A stretch of DNA of 64,000 bases, from assembly GCA_964106645.2 (NCBI GenBank), contig OZ067038.1; one strand, written 5' to 3'. The notes below the pieces were generated by a model, which made no database searches, had not been told where the DNA came from, and worked only from the letters and a program-made list of their open reading frames with translations. The translations under genes were made by a program, and so were the position numbers. Positions 6,511 to 59,715 of the stretch are shown piece by piece (within the stretch, counting starts at the first letter, position 1; the number at the start of each line of letters is the position of its first letter). This DNA is from Podarcis pityusensis (Eukaryota).

Positions 6511-8230
6511 TCTCAGCATAAGTCACAGTACATCTACTATGACTGGCTGGCCTTACTAGCCAAACCAAAAACTTTGCCCCCCCCCCCCACTAAACCTAAT
6601 CTGGCCCTGTACAGTAGTGACGTCCAAGCATTCCTCACAGAAAAGACTTGCAGTTGCTTGGCAGTTAGGGTACCCTGACTCAAGCTGCCCCAGCTGGCCA
6701 AAGGAAGGTTGAAAGGGAGCTTCCCACTTTGGTCACTTCTTGGTCAATATACCCTTGGAACCACAGGAATGAAGTGACCCAGCAGCCCTTAGCCTTCCTC
6801 CCAGACTTTAAGCTAGGGAGTGGATGAAGGTCACTGCACAACTGCTAGGCTGAGCTCTCCAAGGCTGGGAAGAACCAGGGAATGGCAATATGCTTACCAT
6901 GGTTAAGAAGAATATGGAACACTGATGGTGCTGTACTTACTGTCTGACCAGTTATTTTTAGGCTTCTGTGATGGGCACCCACTACAGAAAAGGTAGTATA
7001 GGCAGCTGTTTTGGAATACAGAAGGAAGAGATATAGAAACCTGAGCAATGAGACAAAATGTCAGTTGATGTGGAGTGAAACATTTGTTAAAGCAGACTGT
7101 GGGTGGCATTTTTAAGTTTGGGGATGCATAAAAGACTTAAATGAATATGGAGGGAACAGGAAAAGGGTGGAAGAATGAATAAATGCAATGGGGAGACTGA
7201 CAGTGAGAAATGGCAGGACAAAAGAATTATACCATATAGGAGACAGATCTGCCTCCCTCCTAACCTTGCTTGCTCAATAGTAAATTCACAAGGGCTATTG
7301 AATAGGAACTACAGGTAAATGGACATGGCCCAATCATGTCTGAGGCAGTGGAGTGTGGGTGTGAAAGCAACTGCTGAAACTGTATTTTTTTAAAAAATAA
7401 CACCAACAGAAACAAAGGGCAGAAGGAATCACTGTAGTTCATACATTGTCAAAAGTTCTTAAATTAAACACTGTACTTGTGGTCTAAAGTTGACATATGC
7501 ATCAATTTAAAAAATGCAACTGAATAATATCCCTGGGCTCTTAATATTTTCTTGGAAATATTCAGCAGCAGCATTTCCTAAGGCTTTTATAAGTAGCTTA
7601 TGTGGCAGCTCTGGAGAAACCAACTTTTCCTCCTGGAGTCAAACATTGGCTTCTTTAGCAGCTTGGCTGAACTAGGAGCCGAAGAGATGGTTACATAAAA
7701 TAGGCTAACAGGGTTGGGCTAATTTTCAGGTTGCTCAATGTGTCTTATTTCCAGGTTAATGTGCATAGAACTGCAGCCGTCATTTCTTTGCTGTTCTCTC
7801 CTAGTATGACCTCTCATTTCTCTGCCTCTCTTTGCTAAAATAATCCATTAAAGCATAGGCTAGTGCACATCCAGGGTAATAACTGTATTATAGATATATG
7901 AAATTTGCATTTCCGAGTGATCTTGATATTTACTTCAGAATGCTGAAAGCTATATTCTTTTTTATAAAGGTTTAGAACAAATGTTTGTTAGACCAATACA
8001 GCTGACATGATGGAGTATACAGTACTTAAAACAACTATATGATGATTTTTGTTCTTTATAAATATTGTCCCTCAACATTGTCACATTTCCGATATCACTT
8101 CATTTCAACTCCATTCCCCCCATGTCCTCTCTACATATATTCAAAATAATCAATAAAAAAAGAAACAAAACACTAGAAGGGTAAGCATTCCTAATTTTCT
8201 GTAAGTAAAATGTTTGGAATACTTTGCAAG

Positions 8231-8781
8231 TGTCTGGGAGCTGACAAGGAGAACAGGTCATTCGCAGATCAGAGAAATACAGTGAAACACCAGCTAACTC
8301 ACAGGTAGTTTCTTTATTAAGGGAGCAAATCAAGTAACAAATGGTTGCTTCTGATGAAGCAGTTGTCCATACTGGCTTGGAACTCCTCCTCCACTCCCTA
8401 TCCCTCTGTCTATGGCAAGCCCCAAGGGACCCTCTCTGTTGCTTCCTGGCTCGGTAACATGCATTTAGGTGAGAGTTTTGGGATGTGGAGGTGGGGGTTT
8501 GCAAGCTGTTAGCAGAGAAGCTGTCAGGGTGGCTCTGTGGTGGATCTAACAAGTCTGATTCCTGTCTCTGCCCTGTGCTGGGGCACCTGCCTGTTTCCTC
8601 CTCTTCCTCATCCTCCAAGCTCCCAGCCTCCAGTACTTCCCAGCTCTTCCCCTCCTCTGGGGTGTGGCTGGTTTCCCACCAGCAGAAGACAGGATCTAAA
8701 TCCTCTCCCTCTGTGCTTCCCCTGGGGGGCTCTTGGTCAGGTGGCTTCCACCACCACTCCTCATCCAGCCAGTCCCTGACA
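8231..8781 (-). mobile_element. Solo LTR of a Gypsy/Ty3-type retrotransposon
   Basis: 551 bp; on minus starts TGTCAGGGA and ends TCCCAGACA (terminal inverted repeat, TG..CA); flanks gcaag (8226-8230) and tcaag (8782-8786) form a 5-bp TSD with 1 mismatch; AATAAA on minus near 8313; related 5' end at 52410-52584. Confidence 0.8.
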
Positions 8782-9049
8782 TCAAGCAATAGAAGAATAT
8801 ACTTTTTTGTAAAACTGATATCTAAAGTAAAATTCTGTTTGGTGTAATCAAACAAGTTTCTCCACAAGTTACCCCATCAAAGGAAAACCTACCATGCCTT
8901 TTTGTAAAAGAAAACATGTCAATGCCTTTGCCCTCACAAGGGGTAATGATAAACTTCTGCACAGACTTCCTTAGGTAACATTCAAGACCATCCAATCACA
9001 CCTGTGCTGAACTGGACTGGACTCCTACTGAGACTGAAAAGGTTGAAGA

Positions 9050-15353: not shown

Positions 15354-17295
15354 TTATTATTTATACCCCGCCCATCTGGCTGGGTTTCCCCAGCCACTCT
15401 GGGCGGCTTCCAAAAGAATATTAAAATACTATGATACATCAAACATTAAAAGCTTCCCTAAACAGGGCTGCCTTCAGATGTCTTCTAAAAGTCTGGTAGT
15501 TGTTGTTCTCTTTGACATCTGGTGGGAGGGCGTTCCACAGGGAGGGCGCCACTACCGAGAAGGCCCTCTGCCTGGTTCCCTGTAACTTGGCTTCTCGCAG
15601 TGAGGGAACCGCCAGAAGGCCCTCGGTGCTGGACCTCAGTGTCCGGGTAGAACGATGGAGGTGGAGACGCTCCTTCAGGTATACTGGACCGAGGCCGTTT
15701 AGGGCTTTAAAGGTCAGCACCAACACTTTGAATTGTGCTCGGAAACGTACTGGGAGCCAATGTAGGTCTTTCAAGACCGGTGTTATATGGTCTCGGCGGC
15801 TGTTCCCAGTCACCAGTCTGGCTGCTGCATTCTGGATTAGTTGTAGTTTCCGGGTCACCTTCAAAGGTAGCCCCACGTAGAGTGCATTGCAGTAGTCCAA
15901 GCGGGAGATAACCAGAGCATGCACCACTCTGGCGAGGCAGTCCGCGGGCAGATAGGGTCTCAACCTACGTACCAGATGGAGCTGGTACACAGCTGCCCTG
16001 GACACGGATTTAACCTGTGCCTCCATGGACAACTGTGAGTCCAAAATGACTCCCAGGCTGCGCACCTGGTCCTTCAGGGGCACGGTTACCCCATTCAGGA
16101 CCAGGGAATCCCCCACACCTGCCCGCCTCCTGTCCCCCAGAAACAGTACTTCTGTCTTGTCAGGATTCAACCTCAATCTGTTTGCCGCCATCCATCCTCC
16201 AACCGCCTCCAGACACTCACACAGGACCTTCACCGCCTTCACTGGTTCTGATTTAAAGGAGAGGTAGAGCTGGGTGTCATCTGCATACTGATGAACACCC
16301 AGTCCAAACCCCCTGATGATCTCTCCCAGCGGCTTCATATAGATATTAAAAAGCATGGGGGAGAGGACAGAACCCTGAGGCACCCCACAAGTGAGAGCCC
16401 AAGGGTCTGAACACTCATCCCCCACCACCACTTTCTGAACACGGCCCAGGAGGAAGGAGCGGAACCACTGTATGACAGTGCCCCCAGCTCCCAGCCCCTC
16501 AAGACGGTCCAGAAGGATGTTATGGTCGATGGTATCAAACGCCGCTGAGAGATCCAGCAGAACTAGGAAACAGCTCTCACCTTTGTCCCTAGCCCGCCGG
16601 AGATCATCAACCAGTGCGACCAAGGCAGTTTCAGTCCCGTGATGAGGCCTGAATCCCGATTGGAAGGGATCCAAATGGTCCGCTTCTTCCAGGCGTGCCT
16701 GGAGTTGTTCAGCAACCACTCGCTCAATCACCTTGCCCAGGAATGGAAGATTTGAGACTGGGCGATAGTTGGCCATCGTGGCCGCATCTAAAGATGGTTT
16801 TTTAAGAAGCGGTTTAATAACCGCCTCTTTCAGCGGGTCTGGGAAGGCTCCCTCACGGAGGGAAGCATTCACCACCCCACGAAGCCCATCGCCCAGCCCT
16901 TCCCGGCTAGCTTTTATAAGCCAGGATGGGCAAGGATCAAGGAGACAGGTGGTTGGTTTCACTCGTCCAAGCAGCCTGTCCACATCCTCGGAGGTAACAG
17001 ATTGGAATTGATCCCACACAATTTGACTAGACAGGACTCTAGCACTCCCCCGCCCCGGCCCTGCTCCCACGGTGGCGTCTACCTCTTCCCGAATCTGAGC
17101 GACTTTATCTGCAAAAAACTTTGCAAAATCATTGCAGGAGATCATGTGGCCCGTATTGGGCCCCGATGTAGCAGGTGGTTCCGCTAAATTGCGGACCACC
17201 TGAAAAAGTCTCCTGGTGCTGTTTTCTGCAGATGCAATAGAGGCGGCGAAGAAAGCCTTCTTCGCCGTCGCTACCGCCACTTGGTAGGCTCGACA
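15320..17295 (-). mobile_element. Young 5'-truncated L2 LINE with (TTA)n tail
   Basis: Uninterrupted RT ORF, high CpG retention, 3' stem-loop gccgcccagagtggctggggaaacccagccagatgggcggggtata and (TTA)n tail at about 15320-15352; abrupt switch to AT-rich flank at about 17295. Confidence 0.97.
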
Positions 17296-17298
17296 CAT
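15439..17298 (-). CDS. L2 ORF2 reverse transcriptase (endonuclease domain missing), 619 aa from the junction ATG
   Basis: ORF track 15439..17367: NYRPVSNLPFLGKVIER, QSGFR..HGTETAL, LLDLSAAFDTIDH, GVPQGSVLSP, HQYADDTQLY, LNPDKTE, RLDYCN, LHWLPV; no stop or frameshift. Confidence 0.9.
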   Translation of the reverse strand: MCRAYQVAVATAKKAFFAASIASAENSTRRLFQVVRNLAEPPATSGPNTGHMISCNDFAKFFADKVAQIREEVDATVGAGPGRGSARVLSSQIVWDQFQSVTSEDVDRLLGRVKPTTCLLDPCPSWLIKASREGLGDGLRGVVNASLREGAFPDPLKEAVIKPLLKKPSLDAATMANYRPVSNLPFLGKVIERVVAEQLQARLEEADHLDPFQSGFRPHHGTETALVALVDDLRRARDKGESCFLVLLDLSAAFDTIDHNILLDRLEGLGAGGTVIQWFRSFLLGRVQKVVVGDECSDPWALTCGVPQGSVLSPMLFNIYMKPLGEIIRGFGLGVHQYADDTQLYLSFKSEPVKAVKVLCECLEAVGGWMAANRLRLNPDKTEVLFLGDRRRAGVGDSLVLNGVTVPLKDQVRSLGVILDSQLSMEAQVKSVSRAAVYQLHLVRRLRPYLPADCLARVVHALVISRLDYCNALYVGLPLKVTRKLQLIQNAAARLVTGNSRRDHITPVLKDLHWLPVRFRAQFKVLVLTFKALNGLGPVYLKERLHLHRSTRTLRSSTEGLLAVPSLREAKLQGTRQRAFSVVAPSLWNALPPDVKENNNYQTFRRHLKAALFREAFNV

Positions 17299-19411
17299 AA
17301 TTATTTGACTATACTGGGGATCTGTTCCAGTCCTTTTGAGCCCCTTGGCTGCAAATGAAGCAACCACAGTAGAAGCAAACGCAAACTGGCAGGGTGTAAA
17401 ATTGGTTTGGGGCTCATGTCTTTAAATGCATCCTGACCAAAAACAAAACAAAATACTCCCCATGTGAAATATTGTGGAGAACTTTAGCCTAAGGTCAATG
17501 GGATTATTTGCTATATAATTTCACAGAGATAAAGTACTACCCAGATGGTGAAAATTACATGACACAGTAACAGTCCTCAGCCCATGGTTTATTAGTCCAA
17601 TATTGTCAATGAAAACAACACCATTCAAAACATTTAAGGAAAAAGAGGCACATACATGCAATGGATGTTCTTATTTTGGGAGAAGCAGAGGAAAGATGGT
17701 GAGCATAATTTATTGAGACAGTCTTCTAACCAAAGCCCCTTAAAAACAATGGGAAGTTTGCAAGATCTATCATTCGCCATTTCACCTAGCTACAGCAGAG
17801 GAAAAGGAGAAATGAGATCAGGCCCACTCCATTAGTTGGCTGAGAGACCAGCAGCCATTCTCTCCCCCCACCCCCACCCCGCTCAGGCAACTATTTCCGT
17901 TCTAGCTGGTCATAACATGAGCGGCTGTGTAACTTTAAGAGTTGCTTGTTTCCCCCTTCTCTTTTTCTGTGTTGTGCCTTAGATTGAAAGCCTTTAGATA
18001 TACGGTGCTTGGGAGATTCCAGGTCCAGTACTTTATATTCAGTGGGCCAGTGCAGAAGTTGCAATGGATTGTGGCAAGTGAATGTTCGTTTCAGTGCACT
18101 GAAGTTTTAGCTTTTTCACAAATTTTGAAACAGAGGTGCAACAAGTGTTGCATTGCTATACTTGCACGTGGCTATGTAAACTGTTGCAAATATTTCATTG
18201 CTAATTATTAAAAAAAACACACACATTATAGTATAGGTCCATACCAGCAGTGCTCCATCTCCAAAACAGTTTTACCAGACTGCTTAGTCTGGTAAAAAAA
18301 TAACAGATGAAGAACACCTAGCAGTTGAAAAGGCAGGATATAAATTGAAGTAATTAAATGAAGAATCTCAGCATTTCTTTATCCGTTATTCAACCTGAAG
18401 AGATTCTGGTTGTGTAGATGGTGGAGTAATACCCTCTTCACTTGTTGAACTTATCTAGCACCAAATCATCTAGTACCTTCCACAGCGAAAGTACCAAGTG
18501 ATCATTACTATAGCCTTCTGGGCAAAATTTGAAGCACTTGCCTTGAATTTTAAAAGCTTTAAATTGTTTGAACTCATCTCCCCTCAGTTATCATCATCAT
18601 GATTTCATCTAATGGTGAACTCAGTGATAAGTGCCAACAGGACTGGAGCCAAACAGGACCACTGGGAAATAAGAGTCAGGTATCATACTTAGAGGGACCC
18701 CAAGGGTTGCAGAAGTACAAAAATAAAAAAGGAGAAAACCTAAGGGGCAGCACCTTCCAATGAGGACTGAACATGCTCAGGCTCTGTAAACATTACTGCT
18801 TACTCCAGCGCCAGTGTGCTCCCACCACTGGTGTCTGAAGCCAAGTATGCATGGTGTTAGCCACAGTCTTTATGCATCCTGTAGGTTTATTGTGTAGAGC
18901 AAGTGCAACTACAACTTGAAAGACAACTGGAGGAAGGGGCATGGATAGAACAACCTCCCTGCATTTTAAGCCACTCATGCGGACATAGCCTCAGGGGCCA
19001 CAGAAATGTTGCTAGAAGTGGTGGGAAACTGGAAGGGGGAAGGGGGAATGGTGTATCCTGGGGGGGGGGGGAGCATGGCTGGCTGGCAGCCTCTAATAGA
19101 GAATTTAGCTGGTTAAGTGCCTATCATTTTGGAAACGAAAGTGGGCCACACAAAAATAAGATAACTGCTTCTACATACTTGGGGAACACCCTAAGTAGGT
19201 AGAAGTACTTAAGTTTTGAATTAAAAGAAATTGATATTTTTAAAAACCCTTTTAAAAAACCTGCCAAAAACCTGTAAGTTTGTTGAACACTGATGGCAGT
19301 AAAGCCTATACAGAGAGAATGGGGTAAAAGAGGTTTGAAGAAATCTTCAGGCAAGTGAGATTCATTATTTATAATTAAATATGCCACATAATGCAATGTT
19401 CATGTGTAAGT

Positions 19412-22790: not shown

Positions 22791-22991
22791 ATAAGAGATA
22801 TACCGTATATGATAAAAAGTATATAAAATGACACCTACTATTTAGGTGATAGGTAGAAGAATGAGAGGCTGTGGAGAAATCTTGTTTCTGAGGCAAAGTT
22901 TTTATTTCAAAAGGTATAAAGGTTTTTATGTGGAATAGAGATAAGGGATGTTATGTCAACTGTTTTGTGTTCCTCCTAGGAGCTATAGTGG

Positions 22992-23371
22992 GGGACGCGG
23001 GTGGCGCTGTGGGTAAAACCTCAGTGTCTAGGGCTTGCCGATCGCATGGTCAGCGGTTCGAATCCCCGCGGCAGGGTGAGCTCCCGTCTTTCGGTCCCAG
23101 CTCCTACCCACCTAGCAGTTCGAAAGCACCCCTAAGTGCAAGTAGATAAATAGGTACCGCTTTCTAGCGGGAAGGTAAACGGTGTTTCCGTGTGCTACGC
23201 TGGTGCCGGCTCGCCAGAGCAGCTTCGTCACGCTGGCCATGTGACCCGGAAGTGTCTCCGGACAGCGCTGGCCCCCGGCCTCTTAAGTGAGATGGGCGCG
23301 CAACCCTAGAGTCGGACACGACTGGCCCGTACGGGCAGGGGTACCTTTACCTTTACCTTTACCTTTACCTT
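22992..23371 (+). mobile_element. Sauria SINE, young distinct subfamily
   Basis: Full-length GGGACGCGGGTGGCGCTGTGG head, (ACCTTT)n tail, CpG-rich, perfect 15-bp TSD taggagctatagtgg (22977-22991 and 23372-23386). Confidence 0.97.
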
Positions 23372-23507
23372 TAGGAGCTATAGTGGATCACCAGCTTGCC
23401 TGACTGACAGTTAAAAGTGCCATTGTTTGCATTATTTCGAACAGGAGATGGATATGTGAGTGAGGTTTCTATATTGATGTCCAGGAGTCAAAGCAGATTC
23501 TATTTGG

Positions 23508-56445: not shown

Positions 56446-58104
56446 AAATAAACAGGAGGCTGGTTATAAGCACTGTAAGATCAGAAATGAAACAAAACAG
56501 ATGGAGCTCATTACAAAGAATGCCTTTATGGAAATCTCTGTGTACATTAAAGAGAATTTCCACTTGGAAGCCAAAAGTAAATGGAACCCTGCCTGCATTA
56601 AAATGGCACCGTAGGAAATATGTTGGTCTGCTGTAAAATAACAAATAACTAGCCAGATACAATGACAACAATATTTCAATACAAACATACATAAAAACCT
56701 ACCTCCCCATCACTCATGCTTCATTACATGTAGGAGGGAAATGCACGCCACATAGGGAAAACATGAGAAAAAGGAAGCAGGATTGGATAAATTGGGGGGG
56801 GGGAGGTAATTCAGTTCAGCAATTGACTTTGTTCTTCCTTCCTTCCATCTATCCCTCCCCCTCCCCCTACTCCTTAGTCATCCACCATGAAATAAGCTTG
56901 TTAATTGCTCTGTAACCAAAGCAGCCTTTCCCTCCAATTGACTGAGAAGGCAATGCTACTGTCTAGGGATTACAGGCCCTATGGTGACAGTTTTAATTCT
57001 GGCCAGAGTGGAGAAGTCAATAAATCGTTCTTGCAGAAGTCGTTACTGACCCTGAGCAAGCCCTGGGAGAAGAGAAGCAATCTCCATCTACTGGAAAATT
57101 ATATATCTCCACAACCCCAAAGCAAACAAATAAAAGCTGAAGAAAAGAATACCATTTCAGAGGTAGGAGGAAAGCAATCTCCCTCTCTTTGTGTGACTTG
57201 TGTCTACAGAGAAGTAACTAGATGCAGGGTAAAACAACAACAAGGTGGGATACATTAGTATATTACTCTGTACTAGTCACAATAAATGTAATCTAACGCA
57301 GAGAGGCAACTGTATAGCAGTAAAATGAATGCAGGTTCCATCACTGAATGTCATATTCATTTGTGAGGGTTCTACTCCCACAACCTGATCCCATGAGGTC
57401 AACCTGAAAGGGGGCTTAAAGCCTATTTATTAAAGCAATGCAGATGACTGAATAAAATGTAACTCTTCATTAGAGGCAATTACTGTAGCCATGTGCCCTA
57501 ATTTACAAATGATAACTCTCTATTTGAAGGACTGTCCAGCTAGCACCTGGACAAGCTAATCAGACCTGTGCAGACAGAGCTTCCCAGTACGGTAAGATGT
57601 ACTATATTTTTGTTTAAATTCTAGCAATTATTTCTATATTTGCATATATACATATAAATTAGCACATTCAGATTTTATGCAAATCTTATTTCTCCTTTGT
57701 TCTCTTTTTGGTGATACATTTCCTCTTTGGGGACAATGCATATGTGGCCATCTTAGAGGCACAACCATTTTACACATTCTGCATAGTTGGTGTATCCTGC
57801 ATTATACATTTTCTTCTTGAGAAAGGGGGGTGTTATCCTTTTAACAACTCTTGAGGTTCACTTAATTTGGTTTGTTGAGCTTGTCCAGTTATATTTCCCC
57901 ATCTTTCTACTCCCACACTGGAATTTACAAAGCCTGAAATCCTAGATATTTCAAGAGATCAAGTGGGTTGCTAGCTAGTAGCTTAACTGAAGAATCATTC
58001 AATATTATGTTTCCTTCAAAGGACGGATTCTCAGTGGCGTAGCGTGGGGGGTGCCAGGGGTGCCGGCCGCACCGGGCGCAACTTCTGGGGGGGGCGCGAG
58101 TCCA

Positions 58105-58616
58105 GAGGGAAGGGGAACGCCCCTCGCTCAGCCCGCGCATCCCTCGCCCGCCGGCAGCTTCTCCTCCTCGCCTCGCTCAGCGCCGCCGCCGCGGATGCCG
58201 CCCAGACCCCCCAGCGCCCAGGGCCATTTCCCGGGGAGCCTCCTCTGGCACATGCCCCGCGCAGGAGGAGGAGGGGGAGGCGGCTCCGGGATGCTCCCTC
58301 CCGCCCCGGGAGGCAGAACGCAACGCACAACACACACACACCCTGTCGCCCCCGCGGCAGAGCAAGGCAGCCAGACGCGGAGCAGGGAGAAAGGCTCGGG
58401 CTCACCTTGGGGCAGCCTCCGGAGAAGCGAGTCCCGAGGAGGAGGAGGAGGAGGAGGAGGAGGAGGAGGAGAAGCCGCCGCTGCCGCTGCCGCCGCCGCC
58501 GTGCGCCCCCAGCACCGGGAGAGAGGCCGCTGGCCGCCCGGCGGGCCGTGGTTCCTTCCTCCGTCGGGCGCCCAAGGGGAGGGGGCTTTGGCTGCCTCGG
58601 CCCGCGGGGGCTCCAC
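58105..58616 (-). other. Captured CpG-island fragment resembling a host first exon plus start of intron 1
   Basis: Extremely GC/CpG-rich with sharp borders; (GGC)n and (CTC)12 repeats on minus; splice donor AAG|GTGAGC with exon end at 58406. Confidence 0.65.
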
Positions 58617-58639
58617 AAATAATAAATTTAATAAATTCC

Positions 58640-59226
58640 TTTTTTTAAAATAAGATATTTATTAAAGTTTTCAATTTTATACAAAGAGAAAAATGCAAAA
58701 AATAGAAAAAATATATATTAAAAACACATAAAATTCACAACTTATTTTTCAATAACATATTTCCCTGACCTCCTCATACCTCCCCTTCTTGTTTTCTAGT
58801 TCAAATTATTTGTTCAGCAAATCCTTATCTCATAGCATTACCGCTAAATAACACCTTATTTTCTATCCAAGTTCTTGAAACTTAAACTTTTACTTTAAAA
58901 AACCATTTTTTCATAACCTTTTATACCATTACAGCTAGAAACCACTTAACGTAATTTCAATCCAACATCATTCAACATTCCTTAATATTGCAGTATTTCT
59001 GTAAATAGTCCTTAAATTTCTTCCAATCTTCTTCTGCCGACTCTTCTCCCTGGTTGCGGATTCTGCCAGTCATTTCTGCCAATCCCATGCAGTCAATCAA
59101 CTTCATCTGCCATTCTTCCAGAGTGGGTAAATCTTGCGTCTTCCAATACTTTGCAATGAGTATTCTTGCTGCTGTTGTAGCATACATAAAAAAAGTTCTA
59201 TCTTTTTTAACACCAACTGGCCAACC
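58640..59226 (-). mobile_element. L1 LINE 3' end (ORF2 C-terminus, 3' UTR, polyA signal) inside the composite hAT
   Basis: KKDRTFFMYATTAARILIAKYWKTQDLPTLEEWQMK...DWKKFKDYL, stop at 58972; AATAAA on minus at 58658-58663; short A tail at about 58640. Confidence 0.88.
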
Positions 59227-59406
59227 CAGTGGCGTAGCATGGGGGGTGCAGGGGGGGCCGGCCACACCGGGCGCAACATCTGGGGTTAGGGCAAATCCAT
59301 GGGTTAGGGGGCGCAAATCCACAGGTTAGGGGGCGCAAATCCATGGGTTAGGGGGCGCAAATTACTTGCCTTGCCCCGGGTGCTGACAACCCACGCTACG
59401 CCACTG
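59227..59406. mobile_element. Complete 180-bp hAT MITE forming the right arm of the composite
   Basis: Own TIRs CAGTGGCGTAGC...GCTACGCCACTG; left about 57 bp nearly identical to 58032-58090; about four 22-bp tandem units ggttagggggcgcaaatcca. Confidence 0.9.
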
Positions 59407-59715
59407 CGGATTCTGCTCAGTGTTCTAAAAGCCAGAATTGATTCAAAAGCCAGGATATATGAATGAAAACATGTGATTCATTCCCTCAATTTATGAAGAA
59501 GTAACTCAAACAACTTAAGCAGAAGCACAAGCTTTTAAATCCCAAACATGAATGTAAGTATTGTGCTGCTATTCCATATATAGTGGAGCACCAGAGTCCA
59601 TAATGTACAACAGTGCCAGCATCTACACTTAATACCGTGACTACTAGATTACAACTAGCTTAGCAATGCCACCACATTCAAACCTAACAAGGAATGGTGA
59701 TAGAGCCCTTTAAGC

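What the first reader, a model, noticed from the sequence alone, without database searches (positions are those of the whole stretch)
58105..58616. Cargo looks like a transduplicated host first exon with an intact splice donor
Seen: about 510 bp of CpG-island-grade DNA with abrupt edges in an otherwise CpG-poor window. On minus it has GGC-rich and (CTC)12 repeats ending at AAG|GTGAGC (8 of 9 match to the donor consensus, exon end 58406), followed by GC-rich intron-like sequence. There is no ATG in the exon part, so it may be a 5' UTR exon. One frame nevertheless reads RRRRQRQRR-L13-GTRFSGGCPK up to a phase-0 donor, the layout of a long signal peptide. Inference: copied from the 5' end of an unidentified host gene. 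At a new site it could act as a portable CpG promoter or alternative first exon, or give small RNAs matching the donor gene.
Basis: partly seen in the sequence, partly recalled or inferred. Interest (0 to 1): 0.8.

Follow-up and report, generated by a model that had tools for sequence, protein, structure and literature searches.

The report
Multicopy lizard transposon carrying exon-like DNA
A small cut-and-paste transposon that recently jumped into this spot of a lizard genome carries about 500 bases that look like the end of a gene's first exon and the start of its first intron, and it seems to have spread to dozens of copies in some species; the source gene was not found and nothing shows that the passenger does anything.

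Summary
In detail: 58105-58616 is 75% GC (CpG o/e 0.75 against 0.22 for the window), with a strong minus-strand donor at 58406 and no ATG before it. It is cargo inside a 1,375-bp non-autonomous hAT element (58032-59406; 17-bp terminal repeats, 8-bp target duplication) that also carries a LINE 3' end and a whole 180-bp MITE. Public DNA runs of four related species all show the empty site, one with flanks identical to the window, so this is a recent insertion and not a native promoter. Contigs identical to the cargo and to the LINE piece stand at about 60 times flank depth in one species; the cargo is at about 28 times in another and about once in two more. That points to amplification as a unit. 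No parent gene, protein relative or RNA was found. The signal-peptide reading is unsupported: a GGC run followed by a CTC run gives it automatically. Best reading: a multicopy Pack-type hAT with probable first-exon/first-intron cargo, a known kind, seemingly with more copies than the three-copy frog example. Unchecked scan notes list similar Pack-type hATs elsewhere in this genome.

The parts
58024..58031 (+). left target-site duplication CGGATTCT (8 bp)
   Evidence: identical to 59407-59414; a single copy in the empty allele, joint 58023 to 59407 with 8 shared letters
58032..58098 (+). left arm of a non-autonomous hAT; 17-bp terminal inverted repeat at 58032-58048 starting CAGTG (YARNG); 58090-58115 resembles the MITE's 22-bp unit (20 of 26), so the arm may reach about 58116
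   Evidence: other family members leave the path at 58091-58098 (tables 5, 5c, 7)
58099..58405 (-). cargo, intron-like part (G-rich, TG-rich, begins with the GT of the donor at 58405)
   Evidence: intron identity is inferred
58400..58408 (-). splice-donor-like 9-mer AAG|GTGAGC
   Evidence: best donor on either strand; 48 of 2000 shuffles match it; use in RNA not shown
58406..58616 (-). cargo, exon-like part (211 nt, C-rich, GGC/GGCAGC run and (CTC)12, no ATG, one GGGCGG box at 58539)
   Evidence: 5' UTR identity is inferred
58617..58646 (.). AT-rich junction segment, an imperfect inverted copy of the adjoining LINE tail (fold-back)
   Evidence: inverted repeat with 58647-58676, 77%; 46 nt at 82.6%, E 2.8e-7
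58640..59226 (-). 3' end of a high-copy LINE (L1/Tx1-like by my own knowledge): last 84 codons of an ORF, stop near 58972, 3' UTR, AATAAA at 58663-58658, short A run
   Evidence: very high depth of relatives; nearest Atlas clusters are uncharacterised chordate fragments; no Pfam or PDB hit, so the L1 label is from memory
59227..59406 (+). complete 180-bp hAT MITE that supplies the right end; its own left end has one mismatch in the 17-bp repeat and no duplication of its own (8-mer before it is GGCCAACC); 22-bp unit x3.3
59407..59414 (+). right target-site duplication CGGATTCT

Best explanation
The stretch is passenger DNA in a young composite non-autonomous hAT (Pack-type TIR element). Shown: the element's ends, its target duplication and the empty site. 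Strongly indicated: the unit of arm, cargo and LINE tail has been amplified to tens of near-identical copies in at least one related species. Inferred: the cargo was copied as DNA from a CpG island spanning the end of a host gene's first (probably non-coding) exon and the start of intron 1. The likely route is template switching during repair or replication of a broken hAT copy; a LINE end with an inserted MITE was joined on, and a transposase supplied in trans then used the outermost left and right ends. At this site the cargo is most likely a neutral passenger, probably silenced; function as a promoter or exon is possible but has no support.
For: 17-bp perfect terminal repeats with YARNG ends and an exact 8-bp duplication, the hAT marks given in PMC3014272. 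Empty site in X1, X2 and X10 (joint 58023 to 59407) and X4 (record 23); X2's flanks have 0 differences from the window. In X2, contigs with 0 differences over the cargo (records 16-18, depth 983-1074) and over the AT-rich LINE 3' UTR (record 19, 1071) stand at 56-61 times the flank contig (17.5); equal depth in GC-rich and AT-rich parts argues against a GC artefact. X4 cargo 28-30 times; X1 1.4-1.6; X10 0.8-1.1. Contigs run unbroken from arm into cargo (X1 record 4) and from cargo into the LINE tail (X1 record 5, X2 record 18). Donor strength and exon/intron composition switch. About single-copy depth in the most distant species and presence in all six organisms listed argue against the cargo being a general repeat. 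Precedents: PMC8277862, PMC4224331, PMC3014272.
Against: No parent locus identified. At the cargo positions that could be probed, only one contig covers the place in X1, X2 and X10. The X10 contig already begins in arm-like sequence at 58087, so even the single-copy version may be transposon-linked. Contig depth is not a true copy number (the tool's own warning), and no second filled site with its own duplication was read. The donor alone has P about 0.024, uncorrected for being noticed after the fact. No RNA support.
Confidence: 0.7

Rival explanations
1. The element and its amplification are real, but the cargo is not from a gene's first exon. It is GC-rich filler from an orphan CpG island or another low-copy source, or an old part of this hAT subfamily whose parent has decayed or gone; the donor would be chance.
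For: No parent seen in four DNA runs; every laid copy whose end could be read joins arm-like sequence or the LINE tail. The single-copy X10 version has two CpG-to-TpG changes (58562, 58565), as a methylated transposon copy might. All protein searches blank.
Against: Strong donor together with the C-rich to G/TG-rich switch exactly at it. CpG o/e of 0.75 is retained. Contigs pop bubbles, drop rare variants and silently lose human-like records, so a parent could be hidden. X4 has a second contig at single-copy depth (11.5) at 58562-58565.
Confidence: 0.2
2. The cargo is an active portable promoter or first exon: copies stay unmethylated, start transcription inside the cargo and splice from 58406 into neighbouring host exons.
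For: Intact donor, CpG-island composition and GC boxes. The interior differs less between species than the flanks do (X1 1/837 against 7/982; X4 0/342 against 13/992; Fisher P 0.05-0.16). Bat Helitrons with promoters or first exons reach higher copy numbers (PMC4224331); 30% or more of animal Pack-TIRs are transcribed as chimeras (PMC8277862).
Against: No RNA run holds it (weak evidence). Only 211 nt lie upstream of the donor, and they abut a LINE tail with AATAAA, so the upstream promoter is probably missing. Low divergence is equally explained by young copies or introgression. No credible host exon was found by Pfam in 30-64 kb (blind to short exons).
Confidence: 0.12
3. The exon part is coding and encodes a long signal peptide of a secreted or membrane protein.
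For: Basic-hydrophobic-small residue layout ending at a phase-0 donor.
Against: No ATG in 70 codons. All six frames are open, and a GGC run followed by a CTC run must read R-run then L-run in one frame. The 70-aa peptide finds only two unrelated weak hits among 1.84 billion representatives and none in the word searches (length-limited).
Confidence: 0.12
4. This locus is itself the native, conserved promoter of a gene.
For: CpG-island composition only.
Against: The orthologous site is empty, with one copy of the 8-mer, in four runs from four organisms, one with flanks identical to the window.
Confidence: 0.01

Closest known systems
Multicopy Pack-TIRs of animals, especially Pack-hAT-N8_XT of Xenopus tropicalis (Tan et al. 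2021, PMC8277862)
   Same: Non-autonomous hAT ends around a few hundred bases of GC-rich, 5'-UTR-type DNA, moved by repeated transposition with a target duplication; multicopy Pack-TIRs tend to capture high-GC regions.
   Different: There the parent (CAPSL 5' UTR, 291 bp) is known and the example has three copies; only four multicopy cases were found in that survey of 370. Here depth suggests about 30-60 copies, the site is empty in a run with identical flanks, the cargo spans a donor into an intron, and the right end comes from a second, complete MITE beyond a LINE fragment. The parent is unknown.
HelibatN3 and related Myotis Helitrons (Thomas et al. 2014, PMC4224331)
   Same: Vertebrate transposon amplifying promoter/5' UTR/first exon/partial first intron DNA (NUBPL, about a thousand copies); bias for 5' ends of genes.
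   Different: Rolling-circle Helitron, not a cut-and-paste hAT; parents identified; higher copy number; older.
hobo_AC and hobo-N hATs of Anolis carolinensis (PMC3014272)
   Same: Lizard hATs with 8-bp duplications and YARNG ends that incorporate extraneous genomic DNA, including retroelement fragments, and still amplify.
   Different: Different terminal repeat (TAGGCTT... against CAGTGGCGTAGC...); the passages read describe transposon fragments and genomic filler, not first-exon CpG islands.
Pack-MULEs of rice and maize (PMC5861414, PMC3310237)
   Same: TIR elements that preferentially acquire GC-rich gene fragments; young, similar copies give more siRNA and are silenced; versions with extra internal TIRs exist.
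   Different: Plant Mutator superfamily with long TIRs; thousands of cases with known parents. In PMC3310237 elements with one extra solo TIR rarely amplified, unlike what depth suggests here.

Membership tests
hAT superfamily, non-autonomous | 8-bp target-site duplication | tested here: met
   CGGATTCT on both sides, single in the empty allele
hAT superfamily, non-autonomous | short terminal inverted repeats beginning YARNG | tested here: met
   17-bp perfect repeat starting CAGTG; motif from PMC3014272
hAT superfamily, non-autonomous | no transposase of its own; a matching autonomous partner exists | tested here: inconclusive
   no transposase-sized ORF in the element; partner not searchable with these tools
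Pack-TIR (Tan et al. 2021) | internal sequence of 100-5000 bp between two ends of the same TIR element | tested here: met
   about 500 bp cargo plus about 610 bp LINE piece between matching ends
Pack-TIR (Tan et al. 2021) | parental copy at 90% or more identity that is not flanked by the transposon | tested here: inconclusive
   none visible in four contig sets, but contigs collapse variants, skip 58430-58507 and lose human-like records; X10's single-copy contig and X4's second contig are candidates; protein routes blank
Pack-TIR, multicopy class | several copies of the same chimera, each with a different target duplication | tested here: inconclusive
   depth ratios of about 60 and about 28 in two species, and a non-orthologous copy implied in X1; no second duplication was read
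Pack-TIR | microhomology at the capture breakpoints (common, not obligatory) | not testable with these tools
   needs the parent sequence
SVA-like or retroposon exon trapping (RNA-level capture) | cargo ends at the donor, spliced to an acceptor in the element; no intron kept | tested here: not met
   about 300 nt of intron-like DNA follows the donor
Native CpG-island promoter | present at the orthologous site in related species | tested here: not met
   empty site in X1, X2, X4, X10
Signal-peptide-coding first exon | in-frame start codon and a protein relative | tested here: not met
   no ATG; no relative; SignalP not available; the start could lie outside the captured piece

The most novel reading that the evidence does not exclude
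A currently mobile hAT family in these lizards repeatedly picks up CpG-island first exons of host genes and spreads them to tens of sites per genome, differently in sister species, and some copies stay unmethylated and act as new promoters or first exons for neighbouring genes: a Pack-MULE-like system, live and polymorphic, in an amniote.
Probability: 0.12. Interest if true: 0.75.

Novelty: new member of a known kind. Interest (0 to 1): 0.42.

Why it matters
Most animal Pack-TIRs are single-copy relics; the survey of 100 genomes found four multicopy cases, and the example it describes has three copies (PMC8277862). If the depth reading holds, this element is an order of magnitude more amplified, differs between close species (about 60, 28, 1 and 1 copies) and has filled and empty alleles. 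That would give a natural comparison for asking whether a transposed CpG island keeps its promoter state or is silenced, and whether amplification affects the parent gene. Without a named parent or any sign of activity it remains a good example rather than a new principle.

Tried and rejected
Parent by protein: word searches with the 194-aa and 70-aa signal-peptide frame and with the poly-Ala/poly-Pro frame (each sees only 0.55-1.75 times the query length); exact look-up of ten ORFs; phmmer against 1.84 billion representatives with the 70-aa peptide (two unrelated weak hits); Pfam. All blank. The poly-Ser minus frame and the plus frames were not searched by similarity. A three-frame profile was built and dropped as too gapped. 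Pattern scan of metagenome contigs and Rfam (one sub-threshold match) gave nothing. Earlier-findings look-up by sequence was blank, which means nothing. Host gene around the insertion: splice-site heuristics and Pfam on 136 ORFs, nearly all from 30-64 kb, found no credible exon. The LINE piece had no Pfam or PDB match. RNA: no lizard RNA run held the stretch, so the single read-laying run went to DNA runs; it skipped 58430-58507 as repeat. Rejected: native promoter, RNA-level exon trapping, and GC bias as the cause of the high depth. Paper searches on lizard hAT capture found no description of this family.

Full report
What is in the sequence. The stretch 58105-58616 is 75% GC with 54 CpG (o/e 0.75) in a window of o/e 0.22; nothing else in the window exceeds GC 0.56 or 32 CpG per 512 bp. 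On the minus strand a GGC-rich run and (CTC)12 (58436-58471) are followed 29 bases later by the end of the exon-like part at AAG|GTGAGC, last exon base 58406. It is the best donor on either strand, and 48 of 2000 dinucleotide shuffles match its score (matrix from memory). At the donor the strand changes from C-rich to G-rich and TG-rich, as vertebrate first exons and first introns usually do (own knowledge). There is no ATG before the donor.

The container. The cargo sits in a 1,375-bp unit, 58032-59406, with perfect 17-bp inverted ends beginning CAGTG and an exact 8-bp duplication CGGATTCT. These are the hAT marks given for lizard elements in PMC3014272. Inside, from left to right: a 67-85-bp left arm; the cargo; a 30-bp AT-rich fold-back of the next segment; the 3' end of a LINE on minus (84 final codons, 3' UTR, AATAAA; L1-like by my own knowledge, with only uncharacterised chordate fragments as neighbours); and a complete 180-bp MITE whose left end is internal, has one mismatch and has no duplication of its own. 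So the unit has two left ends and one right end and moved on the outer pair.

It moved recently. Six related organisms (coded A-F) hold 66-96% of the cargo's sampled words. Laying the contigs of four of them shows the empty site in all four: a joint 58023 to 59407 with 8 shared letters in X1, X2 and X10, and record 23 in X4. X2's flanks have no difference from the window over 982 bases, so the insertion is probably polymorphic within the window's own species or a very close one. This refutes the reading that the locus is a native promoter. Scan notes call the genome a lacertid lizard; I did not verify the species.

It appears to be amplified as a unit. In X2, single contigs with zero differences cover the cargo (depth 983-1074) and the AT-rich LINE 3' UTR (1071), against 17.5 for the flank contig: 56-61 times, the same in GC-rich and AT-rich parts. 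In X4 the cargo is 28-30 times flank; in X1 1.4-1.6 and in X10 0.8-1.1. Contigs run unbroken from the arm into the cargo (X1 record 4) and from the cargo into the LINE tail (X1 record 5, X2 record 18). The tool warns that contig depth is not a copy number, so these are order-of-magnitude inferences, and no second filled site was read. Within that limit, the simplest reading is a lineage-specific burst of one composite element.

The parent was not found. At the probed cargo positions only one contig covers the place in X1, X2 and X10; X4 has a second at single-copy depth at 58562-58565. X10's single-copy contig starts at 58087 in arm-like sequence, so it may be an ancestral element copy, or the parent with a 12-base microhomology; it also carries two CpG-to-TpG changes. 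Because these contigs collapse variants, skip 58430-58507 and silently lose human-like records, this is inconclusive. Protein routes were blank. The signal-peptide layout carries little weight: all six frames are open over the exon part, a GGC run followed by a CTC run must give an R-run then an L-run in one frame, and the peptide has no relative among 1.84 billion representatives. No RNA run holds more than 0.04 of the words, and four runs guessed to be RNA from organisms C and F hold next to none; this is weak evidence of absence.

How it most likely works. Shown: ends, duplication, empty site, physical linkage of arm, cargo and LINE tail. Indicated: amplification. Inferred: capture at the DNA level, because the intron side is kept, by template switching in a broken or stalled hAT copy (the gap-filling and FoSTeST models of PMC8277862). 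The fold-back at 58617-58676 fits such a repair scar but could also be two LINE tails meeting. A LINE end already holding a MITE was added, and a transposase acting in trans used the outer ends. The cargo starts only 211 nt above the donor, directly behind a LINE tail with a polyadenylation signal, so any transcription through the donor would have to begin inside the cargo. The default expectation is a neutral and probably methylated passenger (young, similar Pack-MULE copies are the most silenced, PMC5861414). The interior is somewhat less diverged than the flanks (Fisher P 0.05-0.16), which fits young copies or introgression as well as constraint.

Comparison with what is known. It works like the multicopy Pack-TIRs of PMC8277862, the closest being the frog Pack-hAT-N8_XT that carries 291 bp of the CAPSL 5' UTR at three sites; only four multicopy cases were found in that survey. 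[quoted passage not shown] Membership of hAT is met on the two structural marks. Strict Pack-TIR membership is open, because the transposon-free parent and a second target duplication were not shown. Unchecked notes of this scan describe several other Pack-type hATs with CpG-rich cargo elsewhere in this genome; I could not test them, and they are leads only.

Verdict. A real feature and a new member of a known kind: a young composite hAT with probable first-exon/first-intron cargo (confidence about 0.7). Its points of interest are the apparent high, species-specific copy number and the filled/empty polymorphism. The proposed roles as portable promoter, alternative first exon or small-RNA source are untested. 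Interest 0.42.

Noticed in passing
window 15439-17367 (-): 642-codon open frame with a reverse transcriptase domain (PF00078, E 3.7e-37); L2/CR1-like by my own knowledge, apparently a young 5'-truncated LINE copy and one of the CpG-richer patches of the window.
   Followed up: partly
window 58502-58500 (-): ACG in a Kozak-like context opens a poly-Ala/poly-Pro frame; it falls in the zone that read laying skipped, so other species' letters there are unknown. A word search of this frame was blank.
   Followed up: partly
window 58784-58925, run X4: The LINE 3' UTR piece is at about 63 times flank depth with 0 differences while the cargo is at about 28 times, hinting at sister elements that carry the LINE piece without this cargo, or at young LINE copies.
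   Followed up: no
window 58564, runs X4 and X10: X4's multicopy contig and X10's single copy have C, while the window, X1, X2 and a second single-copy X4 contig have T; this could separate two sub-lineages, or parent and copy.
   Followed up: no
window 58566-58633, runs X2, X4, X10: High summed depth in this bin that X1 lacks; an unidentified repeat overlaps the right junction in three of four species.
   Followed up: no
window 58091-58098 and 59301-59345: Joints in other contigs show several internally shortened members of the same hAT family with short different fillers, so the breakpoint used by this cargo is a recurrent one (tables 5 and 5c).
   Followed up: no
window 22900-23450: Second CpG-rich patch (32 CpG per 512 bp, GC 0.555, o/e 0.81), probably a young repeat.
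   Followed up: no
window 8100-8867 (-): 255-codon open frame without a Pfam match; a scan note calls it a Gypsy-type LTR (s1-725681).
   Followed up: no
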